Source of the DNA: Octopus bimaculoides
Lineage: Eukaryota
Length of the DNA: 64,000 nucleotides
Assembly: GCF_001194135.2 (NCBI RefSeq)
Contig: NC_069001.1
Span: 37,597,379-37,661,378 of the forward strand
Reading direction: 5' to 3'
The notes beneath the pieces are model-generated. The model was given only the letters and a program-made list of their open reading frames with translations. It did not search any database and had not been told where the DNA came from. The position numbers were made by a program, and so were the translations under genes. Positions 2,633-63,763 of this stretch are shown in pieces (the stretch's first letter is position 1; the number at the start of each line of letters is the position of its first letter).

Positions 2633-2821
2633 TCAGGTTGTTACATAGTTCTGTGGTTGGACTGGCATGGTGACTGTTAATAACTGAAATGGAGATAAAA
2701 AAACAACAGTTAAAGTTTGCTCTGCATTTCAAAGTGATGTAATGATTACATTGTTCAATTAAATGGAGTTGCATGAAACGATCGTACTGCATTACCTCTG
2801 GATATCCTTGTTGCTTATTTT

Positions 2822-2859
<38 letters not shown>

Positions 2860-2905
2860 AAGTAGTTGTATACTGCCAACTTAACGTGACAGTCCCAATA
2901 AGGGA

Positions 2906-2938
<33 letters not shown>

Positions 2939-5900
2939 GGAACAAATACGCAATAGAGGACAATAAAACATTCGGAGAGATAGACAATAAAAAGGCGGAC
3001 AGGAAAACAACAATTAGAAGGAAAGGGAGAAAAAGTCGGGTCCTTCGTGGCCTTCTTTCCTCAGTCAAGTTACTATATGGTGGTTGTTCTTTGCAAAGCT
3101 TGACCTCTTCTTGTCCCTATAATTGCTCTTTCCTAGCGTGAGATCTTAAATGACTTTCGAGCCCGAATATCAACAGATATCAGGGTCAAATAAACAAAAT
3201 TCTGTTGAACTGAAATTTCAGATATCGAAAGGAAGGAAAGATGGCGTGAGTGAGAAGATAGTGATGCAAGAGAGATAATTGCGTCATCCACGACTAATTT
3301 GCTCTTGAGAAAATAAATAAATTCGAAATAAAAATAAAAAATTAAAACGGCTCTCTATGGGTACGAAAGGCCTCCATCAACCATATCTGACTATGTCTCT
3401 CTCTATATATATACACACACACACACATATATATATAAATGTATATACACACAGGATTGAAAAGGCTGCCAATCACTCTGAGAGTGTAACGGGTGCTGGA
3501 GTAAATCCAAATATCTTAGATGTCACTGCATGTACAAACTAATTAATTTTAAATAAGCACTGATAATCTTTGATAATTACCTTAGTTTTTCTGTTGAACT
3601 GTGCCCCACAGTTTTCCTGGATGATGTTGTATGGAAAATAGATATCTAACAAGTAGACGTCAGATCTCGTTTCTAGAAGCAAGCGGTCTTCTCCAATATT
3701 GAGAATCAATGATGTAGCAATTTTCTGTGAAAGGGGAAAGTGAACAGAGAAAGAAAAATGGTTTTTATATGGAAATTCAGACGAGAAAAAAAGAATTTGA
3801 TACATAAAGGCACAAAGAGAACAGACATTGTAACAGTAAGGATGATAATGATCAGTGTAGTTGGTATTGTGTAGCCCCAGGATAGTCCAGGATCTGGCAG
3901 TGTTTCTACAGCTGGATGCCCTTCCTAACGCCAACCACTCCGAGAATGTAGTGGGTGCTTTTATTACGTGCCACCAGTACAGGGGCCAGAGGGGGCTGGC
4001 ACAAAGTAAATCGCTGGTCTGGGACTTATATGGAAACGGAGTGAAGCCAATGCATACATTATGTATGAGCAATCAATAACATTTAGGTAGGGCGTCCGGC
4101 CACAGAAGCCAAGCCAAATCAGACTGGAACCTGGTGCAGCTTTCTGGTTTACCAGTTCCAGTCAAACTGTCCAACCCATGCCAGCATGGAAAGCGGATAA
4201 TGATGATGATATATATATAGACACACACAGAGTGAGAGGCTGTCTGTAGTTTGAGTTTTATTTTTTTAACCTTAAGCTTTTATTTGGAGTTGCTGATTTC
4301 CTATATGGGTTGCCCTTGCTACAGCATACAGAGGCCTCAGTGTAGTGATTAGCATGAGGGGAGGGCCTGGTGAAGGAGGGGCATTGGATATAACAAAGGT
4401 AATGGGAGGTGGAGAAGTGAAAGGGAAGGAGTGCCTAAGTGGAAAGGAGGGGAGTGACCCCAGCCAGCTTCAAGGAGCAACAGTGATTATAGCAGCAGAG
4501 GGGAGACAGAACAGCTGTCAGTCAGAGGATGGAAGTGTGTCAGTGAATTAGAATTTCTAACTGTTACATGTACAGTAGAAATGGTTAATTTTCACAACCT
4601 CCTCAAGAAACAGAGAAAATATATAGCAGAGACATTTATCCAAAATAAGTTTTATCTGCCATGGAAAGCAAGTCTTTGGTGAGGGAATATCAAAAACGTA
4701 TAAAAGAAGTGCAAAACAGAAATTTACTTACAATTTTGGGAAGGTTTATTTCTGCTACCATAAATTCTGGATGTCCCTGGGCAGGGTCTTTCAGCAATTT
4801 ATACAATGGCTTTTCTCCACTGTTAAACATAAAACAACACATGACTTATCAATAACTCAGATAAGAGTTGTTAACAAGAACAATAATGATAATCATCATC
4901 ATCATCATCGTTTAACGTCCGCTTTCCATGCTTTCCAACCACATGGTTCTGAGTTCAGTCCCACAGAACCATGTGGTTGGGAAGTAAGCTTTTTAATCAC
5001 ACAACCACACCTGTACCTGTTATTATATCATTTTAGAATTATATAAAGTATGAAAACACATACGTATGCTGCACTGCATGGCTGGATATTTCTTTGATCA
5101 GTGGAGTAGATGGTGCTGCAGGCTGTGGACTGGATTTTGACCCTACGTTACTGTAAGAAACCAAAGACAAATGGTTATTAAATTGCTGTTGCTAATGACT
5201 CCCTGGTTGTCATATAAAACGCTTGGTGGGGTTACTTCCAGCTCTTTAAGTTCTGAGTTCAAATTTTGCTAAAGTCAACCTTTGCCTTTCATCCATTTGA
5301 AATCAATAAAATAGATACTAATTGAGCCCTTGGGTTCAAGTAACTGCCTTGGCCCCTTCCTCGAAAGTACCCTGAGTATTTTATTTAACTACCATTAGAA
5401 ACACAAAGAGTGGAAATACATATTTTCCTTCCTTTTTTCCATTGCTCTATCATAATTGAAAATGAGAATGAGCAATGTTAACAGAAAAGATGTCACAAGA
5501 TTAGTCTTCAGGAAGAGACATGGCTCAGTGGTTAGGATATCATTCAGCTCACAACTGTAAGGTCATGGGTTCGATTCCTGCTACTGCATTGTGTCCTTGA
5601 GCAAGACACTTTATTTTATGATGCTCCAGTTCACTCAGCTGGCAAAAATGAGTTGTACCTGTAATTCAAAAGGGACCAACTTTGCCACATTCTGTGTCAT
5701 GCTGAATCTCCCTGAGGACTACATTAACGGTACACAAGTCTGTGGAGTACTCAGCCACTTGCACATTAATTTCACAAACAGACTGTGCCATTGATTGAAC
5801 CAACTGGAACCCTCATCATTGTAACTGACAGAGTGCCAGTTACTAGGAAATGGTTTAACTCTCTCAGACCTCAAGATTTATTTTGCACTTTCAGTTTTCC

Positions 5901-8900
5901 TGAAAGAAGAAAAGGTTACTTACTCAAAGACTTCACTAATCAAGGATTTTGATTTGTTGCGAATGTTCTGTGGTGCTATACTTCCCATGAACTTCTTGTT
6001 CTTCAATATCACCCAAGAGTCTGGTAAAAATGAACAAATGGAATAAAGAAAGACAAGATGACAGCAACAGGTAGCAACAGCACCATGCCCTACCTCAATG
6101 AAAATTCACATATCAACCTCTCTCAATATACAAACATATCTTATTTTAACAAATTTTATAAACTGTTTTAAGCTCTCTACCTGTTCATTGATAACAACAA
6201 CAATAACAGTCAATTAACTGGAGTCAAGGCAACTCATCTACGATAGTGGCCACTCCAAAATAACCATCTTTCTCTCTTCTTTTCCCTGTCTGCTGCTCTT
6301 CATCCCTTCCTCTGCTGTCAGTCATCACCTACTTTCCCCAGCTCATATGTATTATCAATTACCCCTTCATCCTTGCCTACCATTCATCACATCCACTCCC
6401 AAACCCAACCCAAGATTTACAGTCACCCCCTACCCTTCATATCTTCCCTCTCATCTATATTTACCATTCCTCAAAACAGGTTCTTCGTCCATTGAAATCA
6501 CTCTATCACCATATACTCTGAGGGTTCACCATGATACTTCACCATTTTTATCCCTATCCAGCTCCAACCTCATCATTCTCATCCTCTCTTCAATAATGTA
6601 GCTTTTACAGCAAGTATAAAAAAGCCAAATGAAACTCATGGTTTACTCACTTCGTTTTAGCTTCATTTTGTATTTTTCCTCCAAACCTTCCATAGATATT
6701 GATATCATAAATACTCGGAACAACTCATTCTTCTGGATCTTTTCGAAAAACTTTGGATTGATGACAACATCATAGACTGTACAGGCTTGGCCACCTAGGG
6801 TGGATAAAAACATCATTTAAACTGTATTCAAACTCGATCAGATTATTGATGGGAATGGCAGGAAGTGGAACAATTCAAAAATATGATTATTATTATAATT
6901 ATTAAGGCGGCGAGCTTGCAGAATTGTTAGCACACCAGACAAAATGCTTAGCAGCATTTCATCCATCTTGACGTTCTGAGTTCAAATTTCACCGAGGTCA
7001 ACTCTGCCTTTCATTCTTTTGGGATCAATAAAATAAGTACCAGTTGAACACTGGGGTCGATGTAATTGACTCATCCCCATCTCCTGAATCTGCCCCTGTG
7101 GCAAAATTTTGAAATAATTCTTATCATTATTATTGATTTTTTTTATTGCCCACAGGGGGCTAAACATAAAGGGAACAAACAAGGACAGACAAAGGTATTA
7201 AGTCAATTACATCGACCCCATTGCATAACTGGTACTTATTTAATCGACCCTGAAAAGATAAAAGCAAAGTCGACGATGTTGTGCTCCAGTATGGCCACAT
7301 TACAATGATTGAAATTAGTAAAAGAATAGATAAAACAAACAGAAATAAATAAAAACAAGAGCTAAAATTACTTTTATCAAGTTCTGGGTGAGATTCTCCG
7401 AGACTCATCGGAATTCGGTAATCAGTTGGAACTTCAGAATCCAGCAGTTCCATTAATTTCTCGTCAGATATTTCCTCGGGTTTTGGAACCTGAAACATCA
7501 ACAGAAAAATGTTGCTGTTATTCTTGTTCTTGATATCGCTGTTTAGCCCTGGGTCAGAACTGATGGAACAGACCGATCACCCAAGGTGTTCTGGTTCTGA
7601 TCAACCAGTCATTTTCTGAGGCTCAGAATCCCCACCCCCACCCCCCTCACCGGAACAATAACAACAAGGAAGGACACATAAGATAATGTAGTCCTAGATA
7701 CACCATGTCGTAAAAAAAAAAAGACACAAAGGTCACAGATAGAACATTGTAGATCATAAATCTGCTGGATCAAGGCTGACCTGGGGTTAAAAGCAACAAT
7801 AACAAAGTACATTAGATAATGTACTCCTAGATGCACAACATCAATAAAAGACAAGATGGTTGCAGCAGGAACATCTTTGATCATAGGCCTGTAGAACCAG
7901 GAACGACCTAGGGTTAAATGGTAACAAGGAGGAACATTAGATAATATAGTGCTCGATGCACTTTGTTTGAATACATAATGGTGGTCACAGCTGGACTGTC
8001 TTTGATTATATATTCGCTGAATCAAGCCTGAGACCCAGCATTAAACATCAACAATAATTTAATTAATCTCCAAATTAAACATCAACATTAAATTAATTAA
8101 TCTCCAAATATACGTACATTGTCAGCTTGACAAATATTAATGAAGACTTTTTTATTTTCTTCATCTTTCACTTTGATGCAGAAACCTGAAAGTTAAAAAA
8201 TGAAACCATCAGAACATACAATAAACACATTAATATCATAAGCAAACACACAAATACGTATTGGTTTTAAATTGTAGCCCATGCCCAGCAATTTAGGGGG
8301 TAGGATTAAGTCGATTACATCAACTCCAGTGCTCGGATGTTCAAGTTCAACTGGTATTTATTTCATCGACCCCCCCCCCCCACCAAAGGGACGAATGGCA
8401 AAGTCAACCGTTACTTATTTTATTGACTCCAAAAGGATGAAAGGAAGAGTTTTGGTACTCAAGTTCAACCCCAGAGCTCTGGTATTCTGAGTTCAACTGG
8501 TACTTATTTTATCAATTCCAAAAGGATAAACGGCAAAGCTGACTTCGGCAAAATTTGAACTCAGATCATAAAAACAGACAAAATGCTGCTTAGCATTTTG
8601 AACAGTGTCATAACAATTCTGCCAGCCATATTATAAATGCATAAACACAATAATACATATATCATCATCATAACCATCATTGTTTAATGTCCGTTTTCCA
8701 TGCTGGCATGGGTTGGAAGGTTTGACTGAAGTCTAGAGAGCCAGTCGCTGTACCAGGTTCCAATCTGATCTGGCAATGTTTCTACAGCTGGATGCCCTTC
8801 CTAACCACTAAGCCATGCACCTTCACATTTCATTCCATAGTTAAAGTGTTACATATATATTAGACCATCACAGAATATACTATAACAGATAATTAATGAT

Positions 8901-10400
8901 TTCTAATATAGACAGTACTCGTCTGGGTGGATCTAAATGTAGGATTTCACAGCTGAGTAAAGAGGACCATCTTTAGTTAATGCAAGGCTTACATATAAAT
9001 ACAGGGCCCAGTAACCCTTGAGTAAAGGACCAGCTTATATCTAAATAAGGAGTACACCTCAATATTTATATTTGAGTAAAGGGAAAAATCTGAATAAAAG
9101 TGACAGACTTTGACTTGTGTAAAAAGGTCCACTTACCAGGTTTGGGTGTAACTTGTAAAAACGTGGCAGGTTTGAACATATCTGATGATTCTGGTTCATG
9201 CTGAAGCTGTGTTTAGTAAATATAGAAAATGGAAGGTTCTGGGTGAGTTTTGAAGAATTAATTGGAAGAGAATATAATCATTTTAACATAGATCTTTCAC
9301 CCTCGTACCTTAATTCTTTATTTTACTTAATAAAAATTAAATGGCTTTCAGATTTCAATGTCAGAGATTCAGAATCTGCAAATTTCTTTTAATTCGAAAA
9401 AAAAGTTTTTAAAATTATTTTTTGGTTAGAAACCGATTTAGGTCAGGATTTATCGCTGCAGTATTTTGTATGTGTGTGCGTGTGTGTAAATATTTCTTTT
9501 GCTCTCGTACATCACTACCCATTCCCTTTCCCTGTGGCATGGTATTTTGAGGGCTAGTCGCTATTTCAAAATTACCCCAAAATTAGGTTGTTTTGTTTAA
9601 AAAATGGGGGTGTATGTGAAAATTTTACTTTTATACACTCAATTCGCTTTAAAGGTGATATGTATGATTTTTCGGTAGTTTTCGATGTGTTTTCGACGAA
9701 TCTGACCATCAAAACAATCGGAAATCAGTCGTTCTTTAGATAAACCCGCCTTGCAGGTGAAACGGATGTTAAAGTAAAAATTTACCATCTATCCAGCTAC
9801 CTTCTCCGCCAACTAGTCCTGGGAAGGTTATGGAGGTAGAGAAGCAACGGTCATTAGACTTTCCGGCTGGATTCCCAAGCATGAGACTATGGATATTATC
9901 TGACCATCTCGTTCTTGGTGGTCTATCCTTAGGTCTCCTACCGGATGGCTCAGCTTGAAGAATCTGTCTTGCGATTCTTTCATGCGACATTCTAACCACA
10001 TGTCTGTAGCACCGGAGCTGTGACCTCTCAATGCGGAGAGGCAGCGGTTCGACCAGGAGAGATTTCTTGATCTCCGAGCTACGCAGAGTAACGTTACTCC
10101 AGAGATCCAACGACGGAACACCAGGATAATAATATTAAATCTGATGAATCGTCACAGAACAAAGAAAACAGTTGCAATTTGGTAGAATCATGTTCAGAGT
10201 TACACCACAAACAAACAAACAAGATGTGAAAATACAATAACACGGACACTTCGCCCATTATTCCTCCTTCCTATTTGACCCTTAGTCTCTAAAAAAACAA
10301 TATCTGTGAAAACATGGTCAATATTTACGCTGTCCAGGAAGAGTTTTTCATAGTCCAGCTCATTTGATTCAATATCTAATAAGGATGAATCAACAGACAT
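2633..10400 (-). CDS. PIH1D1: PIH1 domain-containing protein 1 (R2TP co-chaperone subunit), 10 coding exons, 310 aa
   Basis: Exons (minus strand): 10400-10329, 9200-9137, 8185-8118, 7489-7372, 6794-6651, 6020-5924, 5150-5064, 4819-4732, 3724-3581, 2683-2633. All introns are GT-AG, phases chain, total 933 nt. Peptides GFCIKVKDEENKKVFINIC, YRIPMSLGESHPELDKSGQACTVYDVVIN, WVILKNKKFMG and LILNIGEDRLLL...AQFNRKTK|LLTVTMPVQ match human PIH1D1 as I recall it (GFCIK..GKVFINIC, FRIPMSLGEPHAELDAKGQGCTAYDV, KNRPFMG, LSLEIGENRL). Confidence 0.93.
5515..5840 (+). mobile_element. tRNA-derived SINE, family 3 (inverted copy ~49940-50250)
   Basis: TGGCTCAGTGGTTAGG / GGTTCGATTCC boxes, TGTCCTTGAGCAAGACACTT core, CCAGTTCACTCAGCTGGCAAAAATGAG. 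Confidence 0.7.
6906..7110 (+). mobile_element. tRNA-derived SINE, family 1 (copies e.g. 32862-33075, 40137-40260, 55272-55485, 55521-55740; minus 58915-59070, 61140-61320)
   Basis: GGCGGCGAGCTGGCAGAA head, B-box-like GAGTTCAAATTC, conserved GAGGTCGACTTTGCCTTTCATCC...GTACCAG body; dozens of copies in the window. Confidence 0.8.
9790..10125 (-). mobile_element. RTE-clade LINE 3' fragment (degenerate) in PIH1D1 intron 1
   Basis: Frameshifted peptide FRRWISGVTL / LRIERSQLRCYRHVVRM...GRRPKDRPPRTRW, matching the RTE C-terminal LRWFGHVVRM...GRPRTRW motif. Confidence 0.8.
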
Positions 10401-12441
10401 GTTGTTTCAGTTTGGCTTGGAGACCAGCACTTCCCGTTGAGCATGCGCATTCATCTATTAATGTTTCCCCTGCTAACATTATATCTATCTATCTATCTAT
10501 TCTCCCCACCCCCCCTTTCTAGTTACTCTTGCTAACATGCATACTGTAATGAACCAAAATGTCTTAATAAATCTCCACCAAATTACATTCGATTTTTTAA
10601 TTAAAATTCATTAATTAACATAGATAGATAGACAGACATACAGATAAATAGATAGATAGATAAAGAGATAGATAGACAGACAGACAGACACACACACACA
10701 CACATACATACATACATACATACATACATACATACACACACACATACATACATGCATACATACATACATACATACATACATACATACATACAGACATATG
10801 AAAGGCACCACACTCTGTAAAGAGGTTGATGATAGGAAGGGCATCCAGCCATAGAAACCATACTGCAATAGACATTTGGAGTGTGGGCAGCTCTTTGGAT
10901 GGCCAGCTCCTTGTCAAACTGCCCAACCCATGCCGGTATAGAGAACAGATGTTAAATGATGATGATGATGATGATGGTGATGATGAAGAATTCTCTTGTC
11001 ATACACAAATATCAGCACAAGGAATACTGGTGGAACATTGCTATCAAAACATCTGTCAAGTGTAAGCATAACAGGTTGGACGTTGTTGTTTGGGACAGAC
11101 ATGAAAAAGTATGAACCATCACAGAGGTCAGCTGACCTGCTGATGTGAATATCTCTTTGAAAACCAAAGAGAAAGGAAATAACTGCGAATATCTGCTTCA
11201 AAATCTCCAGTTTGTACATCAAGATTACAAATTTACATTTGTACCAATAATAATTGGAAAACTTGGTTTTGTAAGTAAATGCCTGTCAGTTTGGATAAGC
11301 TTGGAATTTCAGAAAAAGAAATCAACCAACTGATTCGCACATTACAAATACAGTTTGTAAGCGGAACAGTAAAATTATGCAAGACTTTTCTCAGGTTTAA
11401 AATGTGACATTGTTTTGTTATCTACATTTCAAAGATGGAGATTTGTATCTTTGTTAGAAGCCAGCTCCTACATCAAAGGAAGAATTTATATCTATATATA
11501 TATATATATTGCCAACTTAGTAGAAATGCTTCACTAAGGAGTTCCAATAAGGTCGAAACATGCTAGTCGCACCTCAACCACCACCACCACCACCACCACC
11601 ACCACCAAAACCACCACTCTGAAGAATGCAGTCACTGACTTACAAAACGACGGGATGGACACGACTGGAGTGTCATTGATCATTGGTGTCTGCTTCATCC
11701 AAGCTAAAGACTTAGTTATCAATTGGCGTATTAAGAATGGCAACCAAATCTCCCTCAAGTCACATTCTACTGTCATAAACTAGGAAGAACACACGGGATA
11801 GCATAGTCCCAGATATACTGTGGCGGAAAAATCTATCGAGATGGTCACGATTGGAACACCATTAATCAAGGCTGCTCTAATCGTGCTCTACTTTGGGCTA
11901 AACAACTTAGCAACACCAACTCCACCACCATCATCATCATTTCAAGAAAGACGTCAACATCACCCTCATCACTACAACCATTACTTCAAAGAAGGTACCA
12001 CCGCCGCCGCCTCCTTAACTGCCGTTACTACCTGCACCATCACTACTACTACTACTATTATCAACAACAACGCGTCCACCGCCATCACCACTCCAACAAG
12101 AATTCCACCACCACCACCACTCCCACAAGAATTCCATCACCACCACCATCACATGATCACCAGTGTAGATGATAAATCTTTCTCCCCCACCTCTTCTACT
12201 CAGTCGTTTGTTATCCTCAGTGGGGAAAGGAGTGGAGACAAAATAACAAGTGTTTTCGCGCAAACTCACGAGGTTGAGGAAACTAACCTTGTGCTTATAC
12301 ACACACATATATATATATACATATATATAGTTGTTGAGTATATAAACATATATAAGTATATATATATACAAATATATGTTTATATTAACTTTTATTTGTC
12401 TCAATATACTTAATTAGTTCTGTAGTTGCTTATAATAATCA
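10400..12441. promoter_or_regulatory. Divergent (head-to-head) promoter interval for PIH1D1 and ALDH16
   Basis: The two start codons point away from each other 2 kb apart. NRF1-like TGCGCATGCTC (minus, ~10439-10449) and CGGGAAGTG (minus, 10428-10436) lie near the PIH1D1 ATG. E2F-type TTTCGCGC is at 12254-12261. CpG density is visibly raised. Confidence 0.6.
11013..11406 (+). mobile_element. Fossil 3' end of an RLE-type (R4/Dong-like) non-LTR retrotransposon
   Basis: YWWNIAIKTSVKCKHNRLDVVVWDRHEKV*TITEVS*PADVNISLKTKEK...FVPIIIGKLG resembles the R4-type restriction-like endonuclease domain (RPDIVV...K.EK...VPIVIGALG). Contains in-frame stops and a frameshift. Confidence 0.7.
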
Positions 12442-16530: not shown

Positions 16531-16562
<32 letters not shown>

Positions 16563-17779: not shown

Positions 17780-17826
<47 letters not shown>

Positions 17827-20318: not shown

Positions 20319-20357
<39 letters not shown>

Positions 20358-23300
20358 CCNNNNNNNNNNNNNNNNNNNNNCCCCCCCCCTCTCTCTCTCT
20401 TATGCAAAAAAAAAAAAGAAGTTTCTGATTAAAACTTTTCTCCTTGCTCTTTTCCACTTTCTATCTCTAGATGAAATTCTAGCCACAACCATCCAGGGTG
20501 TACAAGATGATGTTGAAGCTGTTGTTAAGGCTGCAAAGAAAGCCTTTACTTCATGGAGCACCCTGTCACCCCATACAAGAGCTCGTTATCTCTACAGGTA
20601 AGACAAAGCCCAACTCTATCTTCCCAGGACTACTGTTGTTATCGTTGCTACTTAACCCAGAATTGATCATAACTCTGATTTACCTGATCTGTGATGAGAC
20701 AATCCAGTCATGACCATCCAATCTTGTATTTTTCTTTGAAGATTGTAAGGTGTTATTTAATGGGTAGGGGTGTATGGCTGCTATTTCTAGCCTGTTGTAT
20801 GGGTATGAATCTGTGTGTTTCATTGTGTGTGCTTTTATGCATATCATGCAGTGTCTGAGGGCACTTTTGTGGGTGTCCTATTGTGTAAATCTGGTCTTCT
20901 GTGTGGCTGTAGTTTAACCCTTTCATTACCAACCTGGCTGAAACCGACTCTGGCTCTCAATACAAATGTCTTGTTTTCAAAGGTTCTGAATTAAAATCTT
21001 CCATCAAACCTTAGTCACAATTTATGTTCCTAACACTAGCTTAATGATAACTAAGTTATTTTACTAAATTCTTTGTTATATTTAAAATTAATTGAAAGAA
21101 ACACAGAGCATCTCGACAGAAATATGGTAACAAAAGTGTTAATGGGGGTGATTATAGTTTGTGTATGCTTTTGAGGTTGGCATCCTGTGCCTTTGTCCTT
21201 CTCGGTGTAGTTATGTGAATGTTGTTTTACAAATGTCAAACCATCCAAGTTTTATGCATTTTCATGGTTGCAATTGTTTGTTCTGATAAAACTTTTTATT
21301 TTCATTTCAGTATTGCAAGAAACATTCAGAAGCACCAGAAGTTGTTGGCGGTGCTGGAGAGCATGGATAATGGTAAACCATTCCGAGAGACTCGTGACTA
21401 TGATATTCCAACAGTTATAAACCACGTCTACCATCATGCTGGATGGGCTCAGCTGATGGACACCGAAATGAGGGGCTGGAAACCACTTGGTAAGGAACGT
21501 TATGAAAGTTCTTCTCTTTCAACTTTTGTAAATTCATTATTCAGGGCCAATTAATTTCGATACAAATACCTTTTCCTGCAGGTGTTGTCGTGGGCATTGT
21601 ACCATGGAATTTTCCACTGATGATCCTCATGTGGAAAGTATGTCCTGCCCTGGCAATGGGTAACACAGTCATCTTAAAACCAGCATCTTACACCCGGCTC
21701 AGCTGCCTCCTACTGGCTGAGATCTTTGCCCAGGCTGGGTTGCCTGCAGGTGTATTCAATGTTGTCACTGGCAACGGAGCATTTGGCAGCCGTTTAGCAG
21801 AACATATTGATGTTAACAAAGTAGCTTTCACTGGATCCACTGGCGTAAGCAACCAACCTTTTTGTTTTGTTTGTTCTAAGTTAATTTACATTTCAAATAT
21901 CAGCTTAAAAAATGACAATTATTTTACTAAATCCTTCATTATTTGTTGGAGTTGATCTCTAACTGTGGAGGGAACCTGTGGAAGAAGCAGACCCTGGAAG
22001 ACATGGGATGAGGTGGTGAAGCACGACCTTCAAACATTAGGCCTCACTAAGAGGATGACAAGTGGCTGAGACCTTTGGCGATTTGCTGTGCTTGATTAAT
22101 GTTTCTTAATTAATGTTTCAAACATCAGCTTCATAATGAGTGATTTTAGTAAATTTTTCATCATTTTCAAAATTAATTGAAATGAAGGCAGCAAAAGTGT
22201 TAAACTTTAGTGTTAAATTTATTAATTGGTTTCTTTCTTTCTCTCTTTCTAGGTTGGTCAGAAGCTGCGTCAATTGACCGCTGGAAGTGGCAAAAAGTTG
22301 TCACTGGAATTGGGAGGAAAATCTCCAGTGATAGTCTTTGAAAATGCTGACCTTGACAGTGCTGTGGAAGGTATAGTTGATGCCATATGGTTTAATCAGG
22401 GACAGGTAAGTGTCAATCTCTCTGTCTGTGCTCTTTATTTCGAGGTTAGGTGTAAGCATTTTATAAATTCACTGTAAAGATCCTTTCTAGATGTAAAAAT
22501 ATTGTAAAATACTCTCTGAAGATGAGGTGTTTGCATACATTTTTAAACAACATCCTCTCTACACATGTGTCTACTTTTCCATGTTTGCATGGGTCAGACA
22601 GAATTCGTTGAAGCAGATTTTCTCTGACTGGATGCTCTTCCTGTCACTAAATCTCACCTGTTTCTAAGTAACATGGTATTTCCCCATAGTCAGACATGTT
22701 TTCCATGATTTGAAGTGTTGATTCCTCTCTTGGTAAATTGTTCAATCACTCTGTTGACTGTGGCAAGAGGAATCTCAAGATTCTGTGCAATCTTATGCTG
22801 TCTAAGTCCACCTTCAGATTTACTCACAATATGCCCTCTTTGCTTCTGGTGTTCATGGCATGGCTTGTTGCTATAAACAATTAATATACTCATCATTTTA
22901 CTCACCATTTTACTCACCATTTTACTCATACATTGCAATACTTCAAACAAATTTTCTAACAATCAGTATACTGTAATCTGAAATGAAAACCGAATCGTAT
23001 AACATATATTATGAAGCAGCAGGGGTCTGATGTAATTGACTTAAATTGCTGGCCTTGTGCCAAAATTCGAAACTGATAATATTGTTTAGCTTAGATTTCC
23101 TTTCCTTAACTGTGGTTCTGTCTTCAGGTCTGCTGTGCCGGATCAAAGCTTCTTGTGCAAGAACCCATTTATGAAGAAATGATCAGCAGACTTAAGAAGC
23201 GGTTGGATTGTTTTCGGATAGGCTCTGGCCAGGACAAAGCCATAGATATGGGTGCCATTGTGAATGAGAGTCAAAGAAAAACTATTGATTCTTTTGTTGA

Positions 23301-26300
23301 AGAAGCAAGAAACGAAGGAGCCACGGTAAGTTTCGTGTTCCTGTTTCTCCCAGTTCCTTTATTCAGGACCATCAAAATATGCCTGTCCCCAATGAAATGG
23401 TACACCACAAGGGGCATCAAACTGTTCTTTGGATTTTTTTTTTCTTTGTTCTGCCTTGGCCCTTTCTCTTGTACTTTTGCCTCTCATCTCCCAGCATCAA
23501 GTTGATCCCTTTGGGGTTCATAGTTTTGCAAAGTGCATGACAGCCTCGCTCATGCTGGAGGCTGTGACTGAGTGTTTTCAATTAATCATGGATTATCTCA
23601 TAGCTTTGAGATTATGATGATGAAGATGAGATGGTTTATTTGTAGAATGAAATTATAGGGTAGATGGCAGATGCCAGATTTGGCCCCTTTGAACATAAAA
23701 CAGGTGGAATATTTTGGCCAGATATGGCCGGTTGGAATGCTAAAGGGTTAATAACACTACTGGTCCTTTGTGAATGATGTTCCATGACATATTTGTTCAA
23801 GGCTGAGTTACACACACTCCCTTGTTGCTCCTAGCATCAGAAATGGAACCACCCTGTGATTTGTCCACTGTAAACCATTAACTAACAAAGGAATTGTTCC
23901 ACACCATCCTCCTCCTCATCATTTAAAGTTTGTTTTCCTTGCTGGCATGAGTCGGAGAGTTTGACAGGATCCAGTGAACCACAAGGCTGCATTGTATTCC
24001 ATGTCAAATTTGAGATGGTTTCTACAGCTGGATGCTTTTCCTGACACCAACCATTTTACAGAGTGCACTGCATATTATTTGTTGCACCAGCATTAGTGAG
24101 GTTGTCAAGTAATTTGCAACACAGGAAAGAACAAAGAAAAGGGAAATGACCTTTTGATTATGGTGGCAGCAGAAGGGGAGTATTTGAGGGAGTAGACAAA
24201 TGATTTTACTGTTTGTCATAAAATACGTAAGTAAATAAATAACTGAATAAATTGTAATTTCTTGAGCCATTTATTTCATTGTTTTCCAAATTCGTGCAGG
24301 TGTATCAACCATCGTTGACGATGCCAAACAAAGGATGTTTCTACCTACCCACCTTAATTACAGATGTCCAGACTGTCTCTAGAGTTGTTGAAGAAGAGGT
24401 AATTTTCTAGCAGTCTTTTATTCTTTTACTGGTTTCAGCCATTGGATTGTGGCCATGCTGGAGCAGCTCTTCCAACAATTTCAGAGGATCTCATCAACCC
24501 ACTTTGGTACCTATGCTAAGTTTCTGCTTTATACGTGAAGGGGCAAAACTCGATGCTGGTAACCCCCTGCAGAGACTCAGGTGCAACCATGTGCACACAC
24601 ACACAACAGGCTTCTTTCAGTTTTTGCCTACCAAATCTACTCTAACACTTTGGTCAGTTCGAGGCTATAGTAGAAGACACTTTCCCAAGATGCCATGCAG
24701 TGGGACTGAACCTAAATCCTTATGGTTGGAAAGCAAACTTCATAACCACTCATACATGTGTATGTGTGTGTGTATATATGTGTGTATATGTATGTATATA
24801 TATGTATGTGTGTTAGTGTATATATGTATGCATATATGCGTGTATGTATCTCTCTCTCTGTATATATTTGTGTGTGTGTGTGTGTGTGTGTGTGTACTCT
24901 TATTTCTCTGTATATTTGTAATTCTCTTCTGTTACTACAGATCTTTGGTCCTGTGCTGGTAGCCATGTCTTTCCGTACAGCAAAAGAAGCCATCAAATTG
25001 GCCAACAACACAATATATGGTCTTGGAGCGAGTGTGTGGACAGAAACCTCAGCTCTTGGTTTAGAAGTGGCATCAGCCATCCATGCCGGAACCGTCTGGA
25101 TCAACTGCCACAACGTGTTTGATGCGGCTGCTGGATTTGGAGGGTTTAAACAGAGTGGTTATGGACGCGATGGTGGGAAAGAGGTAAGTCTGAGGTAGGA
25201 ATGGGGTGGGGGTTGTGGTGAAGAGGGAAGACTGGTGTAGAGGTGGTGGGGGAAAATTGTAGTGAGGTGATGATGTAGTCAGGTAGTGATGATGATGGAT
25301 GATGTCATCTATTGCTAGAGAAGTAAGACTAGTTGTGCTGGTGGTGGTCTGATTGAACAGATCTGTGATCAAAGCTAATCTGGCCATGACCATCCTGTAC
25401 AAGGAACCCAAGCCAACATTATCCAGCATGTATTTGTTTTAAAGACTGTGGAAATGTGATTTGTGGGAGATTTGGCTGCTTTTTCTAGCAGGTCATGCAA
25501 CCCTGTAGAGCAGCAGTTATTTGATGCTTAGAAAGGTCTTGATTTTTATAATTAGGTATTATTAAGAAATGTATTGAAAAAACTTAAAATATTTTGTGTA
25601 TTGAAGAAATATAAGCATCTGGACCCCTGTTGTGAACCATTGATGTAGGGGATTCTTTGTAGAAGGGGTGGGGTGTAGGTGGGGATGTTCCCCTTGGGAG
25701 CATCTTAGATTATAGGCTTGCTGGATAAGAGATGATTTGGTGCTTTTTAAACACATCAGCAGTAAGGAAGACACATTAAATAATATATTCCTAGATACAC
25801 TGTGTCTGGATAAACAGCTTGTGAATGAGGTCTGAACTGGGCTGCTAAGCAATCGAAGGACACCTTAGATAATGTACTCTTAGATACATTGTGTCTGGAT
25901 AAAAGATGAAGTAGTCACAACTAGAACACCTGTAATGAAAGGTCTGTTGGATCAGGGTTGACCGGGGGCGTCCTAAATACCACCATCATCATCCTCATCA
26001 TTTAACATGCGTTTTCCATGCTGGCATGGGTTGGACAGTTTGACAGGAACTGGCAACGCTGGAGGACTGCACCAGGCTTCAGTCATCTATTTTGGTGTCT
26101 GGCGAGATGCCCTCTTTACAGAATGTACTGGATGCTTTTAATGTGGTGTCAGCACTATGTCTGAATAAAAGGGAGGATGGTCATTGCTGGGATCTTATTG
26201 ACAACTGCACTGGTATGGTCATGTGATGTGTATGGGCGAGGACAGCTGTGTAAAGAAGTGCTGATCTCTGAGTGTGGAGGGAACCTGTGGAAGAGGTAGA

Positions 26301-29300
26301 CCCAGTGAGACATGGAACGAAGTAGTGAAGCATGATCTTCGAACTTTGAGCCTTGCAGAGGCAATGACAAGTGACCAAGACCTTTGGTGATGTAATGTGC
26401 TTGAGAGCCTGGTGGCATGTAAAGAATACCTTTTGAGCGTTGGGCCTCACGGAGGCAAATGGCCATGACCGAGACCTTTGGCATTATGTCATGCTTGAGA
26501 AGACCCATCAAGCCGAGCAAAGTTGCCATCCTGGCAGATACCAGTATCATGCAAATTGGCACCCATGCCAGTGGCATGTAAAAGCAGCTTGGTGTCACAC
26601 AAATGGCTCCCATGCCAGTGACATGCAAAAGCACCCATTACATTCTCGGAGTGGTTGGCATTAGGAAGGGCATCTAGCCATAGAAAACCATGCCAAATCA
26701 AACTGGATCCTGGTGCAGCCTTCCAGCATGCCAGCCCAGTCAAACTGTCCAACCCATGCCAGCATGGACAACTGACGTTAAATGATGATGATGATGGTTA
26801 CTGGATAAGAGCTAACTTATGAAATCTTGTAGAAAATCCTTAAGTGAAGTCCCTTGTCTTGTAGGGTTTGTATGAGTATGTGCAACCATCTTGGATGAAT
26901 AAACCAAAACATGAAAAAGTTGAAGTTGATATGAAGGCTTTTGGTTCTGCTGAATTCTCTCATTCTTTGCCAGGCAACCAAAGTGTGATTCCACCCAACA
27001 CTGATCCTACAACAGCACCAAGGTATGAAGAAATTCTTTGAGAGAATGTCAAGCAATTCATTGTTGGAATGATGGAATTTGAAGCAAATCAGGTTAAAGA
27101 TAAGAGTGTAAATATTAAGGATATGTCAGGGGTAAGGAGTTTGCTTCCCAACCACATGGTTCCTGGTTCAGTCCCATTGTGTGCCACATAAGGCAAGTGT
27201 CTTCTATAGCCCAAGGCTGACTAAAGCCTTGTGAATGGATTTGGTAACTGGAAACTGAAAGAAGCCTGTCATATATGTCTGTCTGTCTGTATGCGTTTGT
27301 GCCCCACCGCCAGTTGACAACTGGCATTGGTATGTCCCTGTAATTTATGGTTTGGCAAAAGAGACCTATAGATTAAGTACCAGGTTTTTTAAAAGAATAA
27401 ATCCTGGGGTCAATTCCTTCAACTAAAATTCTTTAAGATAATGCTCCAGCATGGCTAGAGTCTAATGACTGAAACTAGTAAAAGATAAATAATAAAGAAT
27501 AAAGTTTCTAAAATGGATAAAGAAATTTGAAGGATTGCTTTGGTCCTGTGGTAGAACATCTATCATGTCTGCAAAAGTTTTGGGTTCAAGCCCCCAGACA
27601 GCCTTTGATTTTTTTTTTTTTAAATCCAAAAGAGGGGTTTTTCAACCTAATATCTACACTCTTGCTTATAACTTTATCTGCTTCAAGACCTGACATGTCC
27701 AAGAAATAAAACAGTTCTGTACAAAGTTGAAGCTTGGAATTTGCAATATTATTTTTATTCCAGAGTTTACAATTGTTTCAGCAACTCCAAAGTGACTAAT
27801 CCTGCATCATGTTTATAAACCTGTCTGTTTTATTATTTGTACTCAATGATGGAAAAGTAATTTGTAGGTTTTCAGTTTTTCTGTTCATTTGGGAAAGTTC
27901 CATACAGGAACATCTCCTTTCAATTCATTGAAGGTGAGTTGTGAGGGTTCATTGAGGGCAATTTAATCGGCCATTAAAAGTGGGTTTTAGGGGCCTTTTA
28001 TCAGCCATTAAAGGTGAGTTGTGAGGGCCCTTTCTCTGACACATAAACATTGTTTTATTTCTTTGTTTATTAATTTATGTTTTTGTTCTCCTTTTAAAGC
28101 AAATATTCTTTTTATTTGTCTTCAGTGTTGACAGAACTTACAAGCTGTATTACGGAGGAGGTCAGAAGCGTCCAGATGGTCAGGCCTCTCGCACCATCTT
28201 CAGTGACTCAGGGAAAATGGTCGGTGTGGTTCCAGAGAGCAACCGCAAGGATGTCCGCAATGCTGTGGAAGCTGCACAGAAAGCTGCCCCTGGGTATTGT
28301 TCAGTTTTTGCCTTTTTATCTGCCTCGCTGCATCTAGGGTTGAGCAATATCTAAGTGATCTATCTGGTCTGGTGGAATTTCAGTCTTTTTGAGGGGAAGA
28401 AAATAAAGAACCATTAACTGGAAGGGTCAACAGATTGCCCTTCTTAGGGAGTTCTGAAGCCTTTAATTTCAGTGTCTTTAATGTTAATATTTTAATGTGT
28501 GTGTGTGTGTAATTGCTCATGAATACTCATGTTGGGTTTTCTTTCAGCTGGGCCAACAAGACCTCACGTCTACGCTCACAGATCATGTATTACATTGCCG
28601 AGAACCTGGGTGCTCGCTGTGATGAGAATGCTCAACTTTTACATGAAATGACAGGTCGAGAGATGAATGATTGTCTCAATGAAGTTCAGTTGTCCATAGA
28701 ACGGTTGTTTCACTGGGCAGCCTACTGTGATAAATATGGTGGAACCGTGCAGGTAAGAATGTCAGCTTTGTTAAATATTAGAAATGTATTTGTTGGACCT
28801 GTTTATTGTGGTTGTTTTTGTTTTTTAGTCCCCTAAGTTGGCCCTGAATTTTAAAATTAGTTTACAGCTTAGTCAGAAGAGGAAGGACCAGTCTTGTTAC
28901 CCTTTTCTGAAGCCCCTGAGATAAATGGTTTGGAAGTGGGGAGAGCATTATCCTTGGAGTGGAGATCCAATTTGTATTCTTGCAACTAAGCCGACCCATT
29001 ACTATATTTAGTTTCAGCCCTTTTTGTTTTGAGTTCAACCTCACCAAAATCAGTTTTCTCTTTCATCCCTCCAGGGTCAATGGAATAGTGCTGGGATCAA
29101 TGTAATTGACTAACAACCTCCTATAAAACTGTTAGCCTTGAGCCAAAATTTGAAACCATCACCATCATCATCAAGATCAAGGTGGCAGCATCGTTAGCAT
29201 GCCGGACAAAATGCTTAGCAGCATTTCATTTGTCTTTATGTTCTGAGTTCAAATGCCATTCTTGGTTGACTTTGCCTTTCATCCTTTTGGGTCAATAAAA

Positions 29301-30190
29301 TAAGGGCTAGTTGACTTACCCCTTCCCCCAAAATCGCTGGCCTTGTACCATAATTTGAAATCATTCTTCTTCTTCCAGGAAACTACTCTCTATGGTTTGA
29401 CCGTTAAAATCCACCAAGCCGTTGGTGTTGTGGGAATTGCTTGCCCTGATGAGAATCCACTGCTTAGTTTTGTATCCCTGTTTGCTCCTGCTTTTGCCCG
29501 GGGTAATGTGACAGTCATTGTCCCAAGTGAGAAATATCCCCTGTCTGCTATGAACATGTACCAGGTAACCTGTCTTTACAATTTTATATATATTTATTCA
29601 CTTTGGCTTCAAGAATTGGAATTTGCAGCTGTTTAATGAAGATGTGAGGTGTGGATTTTGTGGGGTGAAATGTTGAGGACTTAAGTGTGTGTGTGTGGAG
29701 GACTTTCATGAGAGGGTTGTGAAGGCTATTTTTACTGTGTTGGGGGCATCCTGAATGTCATGAGGGCTCTCTTGAGTATGTGGAGAAAGCAATTTTTGAA
29801 TGGGCATTTAGGGCTTTCATAAGTGTGTGGTGAGGGCTTTTTTATGTCGTGATTTTTTTTTTTTAACCTTTTTTTGATCTCTTTCTACAGATATTTGACA
29901 CATCAGACGTCCCTGCTGGAGTCATTAATTTGCTGTCTGGTAACAGAGACCATATTACCAAATACCTCACAGAGCACCACAACGTTCAAGCCATGTGGTA
30001 TTTCGGAACTGCTGAAGGTTCAGCATTTGTTGAATTCACTTCAGCAATAAACTGCAAGAGAACCTTTGTGAATTATGGTCAGCCACGAGATTGGACTGAC
30101 CCTGAGCAAGGCCATGGAGAAGAATTTCTTTACCATTCCATTCAATGCAAGAACATTTGGCTGCCAATGGGTGACATTTTTGCCAACTAA
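12441..30190 (+). CDS. ALDH16A1: ALDH16-family aldehyde dehydrogenase (full ALDH domain plus C-terminal truncated second ALDH domain), 14 exons, 824 aa
   Basis: Exons: 12441-12533, 19040-19142, 20471-20597, 21311-21489, 21582-21844, 22253-22405, 23128-23325, 24300-24398, 24941-25183, 26865-27022, 28126-28293, 28548-28752, 29379-29564, 29891-30190. All GT-AG, phases chain, total 2475 nt. Motifs: [12 protein letters not shown] (ALDH16-type N-terminus), [50 protein letters not shown], then a second domain [11 protein letters not shown]...[13 protein letters not shown]. Confidence 0.93.
16243..16520 (-). mobile_element. Short RTE-tail repeat copy (many others, e.g. ~4080-4210, 8720-8810, 10830-10985, 30745-30910, 47960-48105)
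   Basis: Conserved CATCATCGTTTAACGTCC..CCATGCTAGCATGGGTTGGACGG...CAGCTGGATGCCCTTCCTAACGCC. Confidence 0.8.
18259..18487. mobile_element. Tigger/pogo-like MITE
   Basis: TIRs CAGTAATCCCT / AGGGATTACTG, flanked by TA on both sides. Confidence 0.75.
19486..19706. mobile_element. piggyBac-like MITE, family A (second copy 31448-31658)
   Basis: CCCTTT...AAAGGG termini with TTAA on both flanks; internal similarity to 31448-31658. Confidence 0.7.
20918..21138. mobile_element. piggyBac-like MITE, family B (inverted copy 37919-38140)
   Basis: TTAA-flanked CCCTTT termini; near-identical internal sequence, reverse-complemented, at 37919-38140. Confidence 0.7.
21965..22095 (+). mobile_element. RTE LINE 3' coding remnant
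   Basis: [31 protein letters not shown]; same family as 26195-26795. Confidence 0.65.
22715..22860 (-). mobile_element. Tc1-like transposase N-terminal HTH fragment in ALDH16 intron 6
   Basis: [36 protein letters not shown] matches the Tc1 paired-like HTH pattern. Confidence 0.6.
26195..26795 (+). mobile_element. RTE LINE 3' end including 3' UTR and (ATG)n tail
   Basis: [17 protein letters not shown]...[17 protein letters not shown] runs into the GGCATTAGGAAGGGCATC...CCAACCCATGCCAGCATGG...GTTAAATGATGATG tail seen in many short copies. Confidence 0.75.

Positions 30191-36206: not shown

Positions 36207-63763
<27,557 letters not shown>

What the first reader, a model, noticed from the sequence alone, without database searches (positions are those of the whole stretch)
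2633..30190. PIH1D1 and ALDH16 are head-to-head, the same divergent pair as at human 19q13.33
Seen in sequence: hand-assembled PIH1D1 (minus, ATG 10400) and ALDH16 (plus, ATG 12441) diverge 2 kb apart. The ORF track shows only fragments of PIH1D1. Established knowledge: human PIH1D1 and ALDH16A1 are adjacent and divergently transcribed, with closely spaced 5' ends. Inference: the pair dates back to the protostome-deuterostome ancestor and survived the heavy rearrangement of cephalopod genomes. That points to a shared cis-regulatory constraint or an unrecognised functional link between the R2TP/HSP90 co-chaperone and ALDH16. I cannot check whether this pair is already in microsynteny catalogues.
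Basis: partly seen in the sequence, partly recalled or inferred. Interest (0 to 1): 0.85.

Follow-up and report, generated by a model that had tools for sequence, protein, structure and literature searches.

The report
Ancient head-to-head PIH1D1–ALDH16 gene pair
In this octopus DNA the genes for an HSP90 co-chaperone (PIH1D1) and an unusual aldehyde dehydrogenase (ALDH16) do sit back-to-back as they do in frogs, amphioxus and abalone, so the pairing is very old, but it is one more case of a known class of conserved gene pairs.

Summary
On the minus strand, 10 GT-AG exons (10400 to 2633) encode a 312-aa protein identical to Octopus bimaculoides PIH1D1. On the plus strand, 14 GT-AG exons (12441 to 30190) encode an 824-aa ALDH16. 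The start codons are 2,040 bp apart and nothing is annotated between them.

The three assembly gaps lie in ALDH16 introns 1 and 2. Their flanks are collinear with a gap-free O. vulgaris chromosome.

Both genes are orthologues of the human genes by domain architecture, named best hits and solved-structure matches.

I found the same divergent arrangement in O. vulgaris (3.0 kb), abalone (220 bp), amphioxus (260 bp) and Xenopus (8.7 kb). Locus tags are consecutive in a second frog. Accession numbers are 2-3 apart in Lottia, Potamilus and Solemya. The pair is absent or broken in Owenia, scallops, oysters, Nematostella and a sponge.

Origin in the bilaterian ancestor is therefore well supported. 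A shared bidirectional promoter is the likeliest reason for retention, but it is inferred. A functional link between the proteins has no support: no ALDH16 carries the PIH1D1-binding DSDD/E motif. About 600 such conserved pairs were catalogued in 2012, so interest is modest.

The parts
2633..10400 (-). PIH1D1 gene (coding part), 10 exons: 10400-10329, 9206-9137, 8185-8118, 7489-7372, 6794-6651, 6020-5924, 5150-5064, 4819-4732, 3724-3581, 2683-2633
   Evidence: All junctions are AG/GT. The 312-aa product is identical to O. bimaculoides PIH1D1 P0127. Pfam: PIH1 1.2e-42 and PIH1_CS 2e-15, scored on the 283-aa form without the linker exon. The best solved structures are mouse and human PIH1D1, E 6e-41.
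10329..10400 (-). PIH1D1 exon 1 with start codon at 10400 (MSVDSSLLDIESNELDYEKLFLDS)
   Evidence: It matches residues 1-24 of P0127.
5064..5150 (-). PIH1D1 linker exon (29 aa, between the PIH1 and CS domains). Skipping it keeps the reading frame.
   Evidence: The 9-exon model without it gives an open 283-aa product.
10401..12440 (.). Divergent spacer between the two start codons (2,040 bp). Presumed promoter(s) and 5' UTRs. No gene is annotated here in O. vulgaris.
   Evidence: GC is 0.39 and CpG observed/expected 0.45. It is 83-88% identical to O. vulgaris, the same range as the introns.
10591..10989 (.). Microsatellites ((ATAG)n, (ACAT)n, (ATG)n) plus a dispersed repeat inside the spacer
   Evidence: tandem repeats; up to 100 non-self matches elsewhere in the window.
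12441..30190 (+). ALDH16 gene (coding part), 14 exons: 12441-12533, 19040-19142, 20471-20597, 21311-21489, 21582-21844, 22253-22405, 23128-23325, 24300-24398, 24941-25183, 26865-27022, 28126-28293, 28548-28752, 29379-29564, 29891-30190
   Evidence: All junctions are GT-AG. The product is 824 aa and 97.5% identical to O. vulgaris P0007. Pfam Aldedh matches in two stretches, E 5e-192. It aligns end to end with the ALDH16 crystal structure 6mvr, E 8.5e-236, whereas other ALDHs match only residues about 34-498.
12441..12533 (+). ALDH16 exon 1 with start codon at 12441 ([31 protein letters not shown])
   Evidence: The YGPAPE motif is conserved in the bacterial ALDH16 structure and at the amphioxus and abalone gene starts.
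12858..12943 (.). Assembly gap in ALDH16 intron 1
   Evidence: Its flanks map to L001 10381 and 10406, in order.
15447..16218 (.). Assembly gap in ALDH16 intron 1
   Evidence: Its flanks (15125 and 16849) map to L001 13204 and 14448, in order.
20360..20380 (.). Assembly gap in ALDH16 intron 2, 90 bp upstream of exon 3
   Evidence: It is spanned by one alignment, window 19707-21140 to L001 20583-21997.

Best explanation
This is an ancestral bilaterian head-to-head (5'-5') gene pair. PIH1D1 is the client-recruiting subunit of the R2TP/HSP90 co-chaperone. ALDH16 is a two-domain aldehyde dehydrogenase. The two genes were already divergent neighbours in the protostome-deuterostome ancestor. They have stayed so in octopuses, at least some gastropods, amphioxus and vertebrates, and were separated independently in several other lineages.

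The most likely reason for retention is inferred, not shown. The ancestral state was a very short shared bidirectional promoter region, with start codons about 200-300 bp apart as in abalone and amphioxus today. Almost any breakpoint between the genes would then damage one or both promoters. In octopus the spacer has since grown to 2-3 kb, partly through repeats, but no rearrangement has hit it.
For: Shown:
- Gene models and orthology.
- All 57 source-named entries among the 104 PIH1 hits are called PIH1D1 or are generic (hypothetical/unnamed). None is called PIH1D2, DNAAF2 or DNAAF6.
- Lys57 and Lys64 of the phosphopeptide pocket are conserved in the alignment to mouse PIH1D1.

Same arrangement, with a PIH1+PIH1_CS gene on the opposite strand directly upstream of ALDH16:
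- O. vulgaris, 3,028 bp.
- Haliotis asinina, 220 bp.
- Branchiostoma lanceolatum, 260 bp.
- Xenopus tropicalis, about 8.7 kb.
- Consecutive locus tags GDO54_003420/003421 in the frog Pyxicephalus.
- Accessions 2-3 apart on one scaffold in Lottia, Potamilus and Solemya.
- Vertebrate synteny papers list PIH1D1 and ALDH16A1 together in coelacanth, Xenopus, human and others.

Class behaviour: conserved metazoan pairs are enriched for 5'-5' orientation and short spacers (PMC3514665).
Against: - The pair is not universal. Another gene lies upstream of ALDH16 in Owenia, Mizuhopecten, Nematostella and Ephydatia.
- Scallops, oysters and Lineus keep the two genes on one chromosome but far apart.
- In Argonauta hians, an octopod, the accessions are 56 apart.
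- No transcription start sites, expression data or reporter data were available, so a shared promoter is not demonstrated in any species.
- In octopus the spacer has no CpG-rich island. Identity to O. vulgaris is 83-88% in the spacer against 84-91% in the introns.
- Xenopus tolerates 8.7 kb between the genes.
Confidence: 0.8

Rival explanations
1. Neutral persistence. The pair is ancestral but is kept by no selection at all. A very short ancestral spacer is simply a tiny target for breakpoints, and some lineages rearrange slowly.
For: - Spacers are 220-260 bp in abalone and amphioxus.
- The pair has been lost many times.
- The octopus spacer shows no extra sequence conservation.
Against: - The pair survived in coleoid cephalopods, whose genomes are heavily reorganised (PMC9023564, abstract shown), even with a 2-3 kb spacer.
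- It also survived in Xenopus with 8.7 kb.
- As a class, conserved pairs show more co-expression than matched controls.
Confidence: 0.3
2. Functional coupling of the proteins. ALDH16 is a client or partner of R2TP/HSP90, or works in the same process. The linkage is kept to co-dose the two products.
For: Only the conserved linkage itself. From my own knowledge, ALDH16A1's function is poorly understood, so a link cannot be excluded.
Against: - No paper in the library mentions ALDH16A1 together with R2TP.
- The ten papers that name both genes are gene lists or synteny maps.
- Neither the window's ALDH16 nor any of 120 orthologues contains a DSD[DE] motif. By my knowledge of Horejsi et al. 2014 and Pal et al. 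2014, this is the CK2-phosphorylated motif the PIH1D1 N-domain binds.
- Many animals have separated the genes without losing either.
Confidence: 0.1
3. Coincidence or convergence. The two genes became neighbours independently in molluscs and in chordates.
For: A scan that selects pairs known to be adjacent in human will find a few chance matches genome-wide. By my estimate that is about 1e-4 per pair times tens of thousands of pairs.
Against: - The neighbour, orientation and immediate adjacency are the same in two molluscan classes, a cephalochordate and amphibians.
- Lottia, Potamilus and Solemya show near-adjacency.
- Independent origin in each would be vanishingly unlikely.
Confidence: 0.02
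4. Assembly artefact. Exon 1 of ALDH16, or the PIH1D1 gene, was joined to the rest by a scaffolding error across the N gaps.
For: There are three gaps inside the ALDH16 span.
Against: - No gap lies between PIH1D1 and ALDH16 exon 1.
- All gap flanks are collinear with a gap-free O. vulgaris chromosome that has the same gene order.
- Every residue of the orthologue is recovered from the window.
Confidence: 0.01

Closest known systems
Conserved ancestral microsyntenic pairs (CAMPs) of the co-regulated 5'-5' type (Irimia et al. 2012, Genome Res, PMC3514665), e.g. HSPE1-HSPD1
   Same: - Two unrelated genes that are immediate neighbours in several animal phyla, with conserved divergent orientation.
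- Very short spacers in some species.
- 54.8% of human CAMPs are 5'-5', and that class keeps its orientation best.
   Different: - Whether this particular pair is in their list of about 600 could not be checked, because the supplement is not held.
- Co-expression was not tested.
- HSPE1-HSPD1 are functional partners and reach beyond animals. Here no functional relation is known, and the pair was not seen in a cnidarian or a sponge.
Human PIH1D1-ALDH16A1 at 19q13.33 and the vertebrate Kiss3 syntenic block
   Same: - The same two orthologous genes.
- Vertebrate synteny maps list them side by side.
- They are divergent neighbours in Xenopus and consecutive locus tags in Pyxicephalus.
   Different: - The human orientation and sub-kilobase spacing rest on knowledge, not on a tool result here.
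- The other vertebrate neighbours (TEAD2, KCNC3 and others) are not in the octopus window.
- The octopus gene downstream of ALDH16 is an ABC transporter.
Mammalian bidirectional promoters (divergent genes with transcription starts less than 1 kb apart; Adachi and Lieber 2002, as cited)
   Same: Divergent orientation. Start codons are only 220-260 bp apart in abalone and amphioxus, which leaves room for little else but a shared promoter.
   Different: In octopus the start codons are 2.0-3.0 kb apart, the transcription starts are unknown, and there is no CpG island. So the octopus locus cannot be filed as a bidirectional promoter.
Cephalopod microsyntenic blocks (Schmidbaur et al. 2022, PMC9023564)
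   Same: Gene linkages retained or created in coleoid genomes.
   Different: - The blocks shown in the held supplement passages contain at least three genes.
- The held part of that supplement has one block with a PF08190 (PIH1) gene, but it is cephalopod-specific and has no aldehyde dehydrogenase in it.
- This pair is not recorded there. The file was cut when stored.

Membership tests
PIH1D1 (R2TP subunit) | N-terminal PIH1 domain followed by a C-terminal PIH1 CS-like domain in a protein of about 290-320 aa | tested here: met
   PF08190 scores 1.2e-42 over residues 40-182 and PF18201 scores 2e-15 over residues 205-276 of the 283-aa form. The full product is 312 aa.
PIH1D1 (R2TP subunit) | Closest relatives are PIH1D1 orthologues, not the paralogues PIH1D2, DNAAF2 or DNAAF6 | tested here: met
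   Among 104 hits, none is named PIH1D2, DNAAF2 or DNAAF6. The named ones are 'PIH1 domain-containing protein 1' or generic, and they include sharks, frogs, fishes and mammals at 39-50% identity. The top solved structures are mouse and human PIH1D1 at 6e-41, against yeast Pih1 at 9e-7. No explicit gene tree with paralogues was built.
PIH1D1 (R2TP subunit) | Phosphopeptide-binding lysines (Lys57 and Lys64 in mammals) that read the DpSDD/E motif | tested here: met
   In the alignment to 4ckt_A, the octopus sequence 'GFCIKVKDEENKKVF' places K on both K57 and K64. The role of these residues comes from my knowledge of Horejsi 2014 and Pal 2014.
PIH1D1 (R2TP subunit) | Assembles with RPAP3 and RUVBL1/2 | not testable with these tools
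   Needs biochemistry. The CS domain matches the PIH1D1 chain of the R2TP entry 6gxz at 1.1e-10.
ALDH16 | A complete ALDH domain plus an extra C-terminal ALDH-like domain of about 250-300 aa, unique to family 16 | tested here: met
   Residues 12-819 align to residues 5-766 of the ALDH16 structure 6mvr at 8.5e-236. All other ALDH structures align only to about 34-498. Pfam Aldedh matches in two stretches. 120 orthologues are 60-97% identical, and those that carry a descriptive source name are called ALDH16A1.
ALDH16 | Catalytic Cys and general-base Glu retained in non-mammalian members (lost in mammalian ALDH16A1) | tested here: met
   'NQGQVCCAGS' and 'LELGGKSP' are identical to the bacterial enzyme in the alignment. 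The mammalian loss comes from my knowledge of Vasiliou et al. 2013 and was not checked here.
Conserved ancestral microsyntenic pair, 5'-5' type (Irimia 2012) | Non-paralogous genes adjacent in several distant animal lineages | tested here: met
   Mollusca (Octopus x2, Haliotis), Cephalochordata and Vertebrata. I did not apply the exact lineage-count threshold of that study.
Conserved ancestral microsyntenic pair, 5'-5' type (Irimia 2012) | Orientation conserved | tested here: met
   PIH1 gene on the minus strand and ALDH16 on the plus strand, 5' ends facing, in all five directly inspected positive loci (window).
Conserved ancestral microsyntenic pair, 5'-5' type (Irimia 2012) | Elevated co-expression relative to matched neighbour pairs | not testable with these tools
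   No expression data on hand.
Conserved ancestral microsyntenic pair, 5'-5' type (Irimia 2012) | Listed in the published catalogue | not testable with these tools
   The supplement is not held. The main text does not name the pair.
Bidirectional promoter pair | Transcription starts of the two divergent genes less than 1 kb apart | tested here: inconclusive
   Start codons are 2,040 bp apart in the window and 3,028 bp in O. vulgaris, and the transcription starts are unknown. In abalone and amphioxus the start codons are 220 and 260 bp apart, so the criterion must be met there.

The most novel reading that the evidence does not exclude
The linkage is kept because the two products need to be co-expressed. 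On this reading ALDH16, whose cellular role is still obscure and which is catalytically dead in mammals, is functionally tied to the R2TP/HSP90 assembly machinery. A shared bidirectional promoter more than 550 million years old would enforce this. The pair would then be a guilt-by-association clue to ALDH16 function.
Probability: 0.1. Interest if true: 0.6.

Novelty: new member of a known kind. Interest (0 to 1): 0.3.

Why it matters
The finding adds a clean, well-delimited example of a bilaterian-age divergent gene pair that survived the coleoid genome reshuffle.

Its spacer ranges from 220 bp (abalone) to 8.7 kb (frog). That spread makes it a convenient test case for two questions: whether such pairs persist through a shared promoter, and what happens to regulation when the spacer expands.

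It also gives a weak hint for ALDH16, a gene with a gout association and no settled function. It does not open a new kind of biology. Conserved 5'-5' pairs were described systematically in 2012, and this pair may already be in that list.

Tried and rejected
1. My first PIH1 query, a rough join of four exons, found only 6 unnamed hits. The corrected full-length model found 104.
2. The last contig look-up, on a coral PIH1D1 (P0200), was meant to test a second cnidarian. It returned no record, so pre-bilaterian origin rests on only Nematostella and Ephydatia.
3. I looked for unannotated PIH1 exons by tblastn in all loci where no PIH1 gene was called. None turned up in L003-L006, L008, L010 or L011. 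For Asterias, Ptychodera and Penaeus this covers only 10 kb upstream, so those three remain undetermined rather than negative.
4. I scanned the spacers for motifs typical of bidirectional promoters (NRF1, ETS, YY1, SP1, E2F). Only scattered single matches appeared and nothing was shared across species. I draw no conclusion from it.
5. I asked whether a kisspeptin gene sits between the two genes in Xenopus, as the Kiss3 synteny papers might suggest. There is no kisspeptin-like motif in L009 1-10100.
6. Catalogue checks:
   - The Irimia 2012 supplement is not held.
   - The Schmidbaur 2022 supplement has no block with both PIH1 and Aldedh.
   - The Davila Lopez 2010 supplements do not name either gene.
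   - The 2026 coleoid 3D-genome paper has no held supplement.
   - No paper holds both 'PIH1D1' and 'bidirectional promoter'.
7. Accession-number spacing, used as a proxy for adjacency, is only a hint. It is reliable for GenBank locus-tag series and less so for RefSeq XP numbers.


Full report
**What is in the window**

The window is AT-rich eukaryotic DNA with eleven runs of N.

Minus strand. Stop-to-stop reading frames between 2.6 and 10.4 kb carry pieces of a PIH1-family protein. I compared translated frames from the orthologous loci of other animals to locate the exons. Reading the splice sites then gave a first model of 9 exons. The O. bimaculoides reference protein revealed one more 87-bp linker exon.

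The final model has 10 exons: 10400-10329, 9206-9137, 8185-8118, 7489-7372, 6794-6651, 6020-5924, 5150-5064, 4819-4732, 3724-3581 and 2683-2633. Every intron is GT...AG. The 312-aa translation is identical to the protein that NCBI names 'PIH1 domain-containing protein 1 [Octopus bimaculoides]' (P0127). So the window comes from O. bimaculoides or something indistinguishable from it.

Plus strand. Fourteen GT-AG exons run from 12441 to 30190 and encode 824 aa. 803 of 824 residues are identical to O. vulgaris 'aldehyde dehydrogenase family 16 member A1-like'.

**The gaps**

Gaps 12858-12943 and 15447-16218 are inside ALDH16 intron 1. Gap 20360-20380 is in intron 2, 90 bp before exon 3. No orthologue residue is missing from the window.

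The O. vulgaris chromosome stretch fetched through the ALDH16 protein (L001) contains no N. It is collinear with the window from 5915 to 37282. The flanks of gaps 1 and 2 map in order, and a single alignment crosses gap 3. No gap lies between PIH1D1 and ALDH16 exon 1. The adjacency is therefore not a scaffolding artefact.

**Identity of the two genes**

PIH1D1:
- Pfam finds the PIH1 N-terminal domain (1.2e-42) and the PIH1 CS-like domain (2e-15).
- The best solved structures are mouse and human PIH1D1 (6e-41 to 3e-36). The R2TP entry 6gxz matches the CS domain. Yeast Pih1 is far behind at 9e-7.
- In that alignment both lysines at chain positions 57 and 64 are conserved. From my own knowledge, these form the phosphopeptide pocket.
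- Among 104 database relatives, every source-given descriptive name is PIH1D1. They include sharks, frogs, teleosts and mammals. None is PIH1D2, DNAAF2 or DNAAF6.

ALDH16:
- The protein aligns from residue 12 to 819 with the crystal structure of a bacterial ALDH16 (6mvr, 8.5e-236). All other aldehyde dehydrogenases cover only the first domain.
- The catalytic 'VCCAGS' cysteine and the 'ELGG' glutamate are present.
- 120 relatives at 60-97% identity come from sponges, cnidarians, lophotrochozoans, crustaceans, echinoderms, hemichordates, tunicates, amphioxus and vertebrates. Those that carry a descriptive source name are called ALDH16A1.

Orthology of both genes to the human genes is as secure as it can be without a formal tree.

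**Is the pair conserved elsewhere?**

I used ALDH16 proteins as anchors and fetched their genomic loci with 10 kb of flank.

Direct positives. A gene with PIH1 plus PIH1_CS domains lies immediately upstream on the opposite strand in four genomes. Gene ranges in these tables start at the ATG, so the distances are between start codons.

| Species | Spacing |
|---|---|
| O. vulgaris | 3,028 bp |
| Haliotis asinina (abalone) | 220 bp |
| Branchiostoma lanceolatum | 260 bp |
| Xenopus tropicalis | about 8.7 kb |

tblastn confirmed PIH1 exons at those places and nowhere else in the fetched loci.

Indirect evidence from accession or locus-tag order:
- Consecutive tags in the frog Pyxicephalus.
- Accessions two apart in the bivalves Potamilus and Solemya, and three apart in the limpet Lottia.
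- Two vertebrate synteny papers list PIH1D1 and ALDH16A1 side by side in the Kiss3 region of coelacanth, Xenopus, human and others.

Negatives:
- A different gene sits upstream of ALDH16 in the annelid Owenia (5'-nucleotidase), the scallop Mizuhopecten (taxilin; its PIH1D1 is on another scaffold), Nematostella (saposin) and the sponge Ephydatia (kelch protein).
- Other scallops, oysters and the nemertean Lineus keep both genes on one chromosome but far apart by accession number.
- Argonauta hians is uncertain, with accessions 56 apart.
- Asterias, Ptychodera and Penaeus show no gene and no PIH1 exon within 10 kb upstream. Given the 8.7 kb spacer in Xenopus, this leaves them undetermined.

**What follows**

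The same two orthologues are in the same divergent orientation, as immediate neighbours, in two molluscan classes, a cephalochordate and vertebrates. Independent origin cannot plausibly explain that. By my estimate the chance for one specified pair in one genome is about 1e-4 or less.

The pair goes back at least to the last common ancestor of protostomes and deuterostomes, and it was broken repeatedly. The two non-bilaterians examined lack it, so an older origin is neither supported nor excluded.

**Why it persisted**

The 220-260 bp between start codons in abalone and amphioxus leaves room only for two short 5' UTRs and a shared promoter. This is the configuration in which a breakpoint is most likely to be harmful.

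Irimia et al. 2012 found the same for conserved metazoan pairs as a class: 5'-5' enrichment, short spacers, fewer insulators and more co-expression. That is my preferred mechanism, but it is inference.

The octopus spacer:
- It is 2.0-3.0 kb.
- About 400 bp of it is microsatellite and dispersed repeat.
- It has a low CpG ratio.
- It is no more similar between the two octopus species (83-88%) than the neighbouring introns are (84-91%).

So any constraint there is confined to small elements, or it has relaxed. Purely neutral persistence of a once-tiny spacer is a serious rival.

A direct functional link between the proteins has no support:
- The library has no paper joining ALDH16A1 and R2TP.
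- The papers that name both genes are lists or synteny maps.
- No ALDH16 among the window's protein and 120 orthologues carries a DSD[DE] motif, the known docking site for the PIH1D1 N-domain.

**Novelty**

The phenomenon is a known kind. Irimia et al. 2012 catalogued about 600 conserved ancestral microsyntenic pairs, more than half of them 5'-5' in human. I could not see their table, so the pair may already be listed. It would very probably have been detectable with their species set, which spanned vertebrates, amphioxus and Lottia.

It is not in the held parts of the cephalopod microsynteny supplement, whose listed blocks each contain at least three genes. It is not in the Davila Lopez 2010 supplements. 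I file it as a new member of a known kind, of modest interest.

Noticed in passing
window 36200-61100, minus strand: A large multi-exon ABC transporter gene lies tail-to-tail with ALDH16. Walker A exons are at 52690-52974 and 38238-38543, and a Walker B exon is at 36946-37257 (ABC_tran, E 1.7e-8 to 5.5e-5). In O. vulgaris the same position holds a 1,472-aa ABCC-type gene with TMD0_ABC, two ABC_membrane and two ABC_tran domains. Eight further assembly gaps fall inside it.
   Followed up: partly
window 5064-5150, minus strand: The 87-bp PIH1D1 linker exon can be skipped without breaking the frame. Exon 6 ends in phase 2, and both the linker exon and exon 8 start with T, giving Asp either way. 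A 283-aa isoform lacking the 29-aa linker is therefore possible. No transcript data were available to check.
   Followed up: no
proteins P0015 and P0154: An unnamed ALDH16 (822 aa) and an unnamed PIH1D1 (293 aa) from Logan assemblies both report a longest contig of exactly 3,868 bp. Together they need 3,345 bp of coding sequence. They may sit head-to-head on one intron-free (transcript-derived?) contig with about 500 bp to spare. That would imply overlapping or abutting 5' ends in that organism.
   Followed up: no
Potamilus streckersoni and Solemya velum: In both bivalves exactly one annotated model lies between ALDH16 and PIH1D1 (tags 035451/035453 and 012034/012036). In the scallop, a taxilin gene is the upstream neighbour of ALDH16. 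An insertion between the pair early in bivalves, followed by full separation in pteriomorphs, would fit. The identity of the intervening model is unknown.
   Followed up: no
window 10880-10990, 4076-4279, 26000-26140, 30700-30850 and elsewhere: A short dispersed repeat recurs many times on both strands. One frame of it translates as '...[12 protein letters not shown]...'. One copy lies in the PIH1D1-ALDH16 spacer, which has up to 100 non-self matches in the window. It is probably a SINE-like element. I did not classify it.
   Followed up: no
window 9772-10134, minus strand (PIH1D1 intron 1): A 121-aa open frame ('...RIERSQLRCYRHVVRMSHERIARQILQ...') looks by eye like the tail of a retrotransposon ORF. 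It has no Pfam match. It is conserved with O. vulgaris at about the level of the surrounding intron.
   Followed up: partly
window 58233-58787, plus strand: A 185-aa open frame ('...[17 protein letters not shown]...') sits inside an intron of the ABC transporter. It looks transposase-like by eye. It has no Pfam match at E<=0.01.
   Followed up: partly
window 23128-23145 (ALDH16 exon 7): The octopus ALDH16 keeps the catalytic cysteine ('VCCAGS') and the 'ELGG' glutamate, identical to the active bacterial enzyme. Unlike mammalian ALDH16A1, which is reported to lack the cysteine (my knowledge), it is probably an active dehydrogenase.
   Followed up: partly
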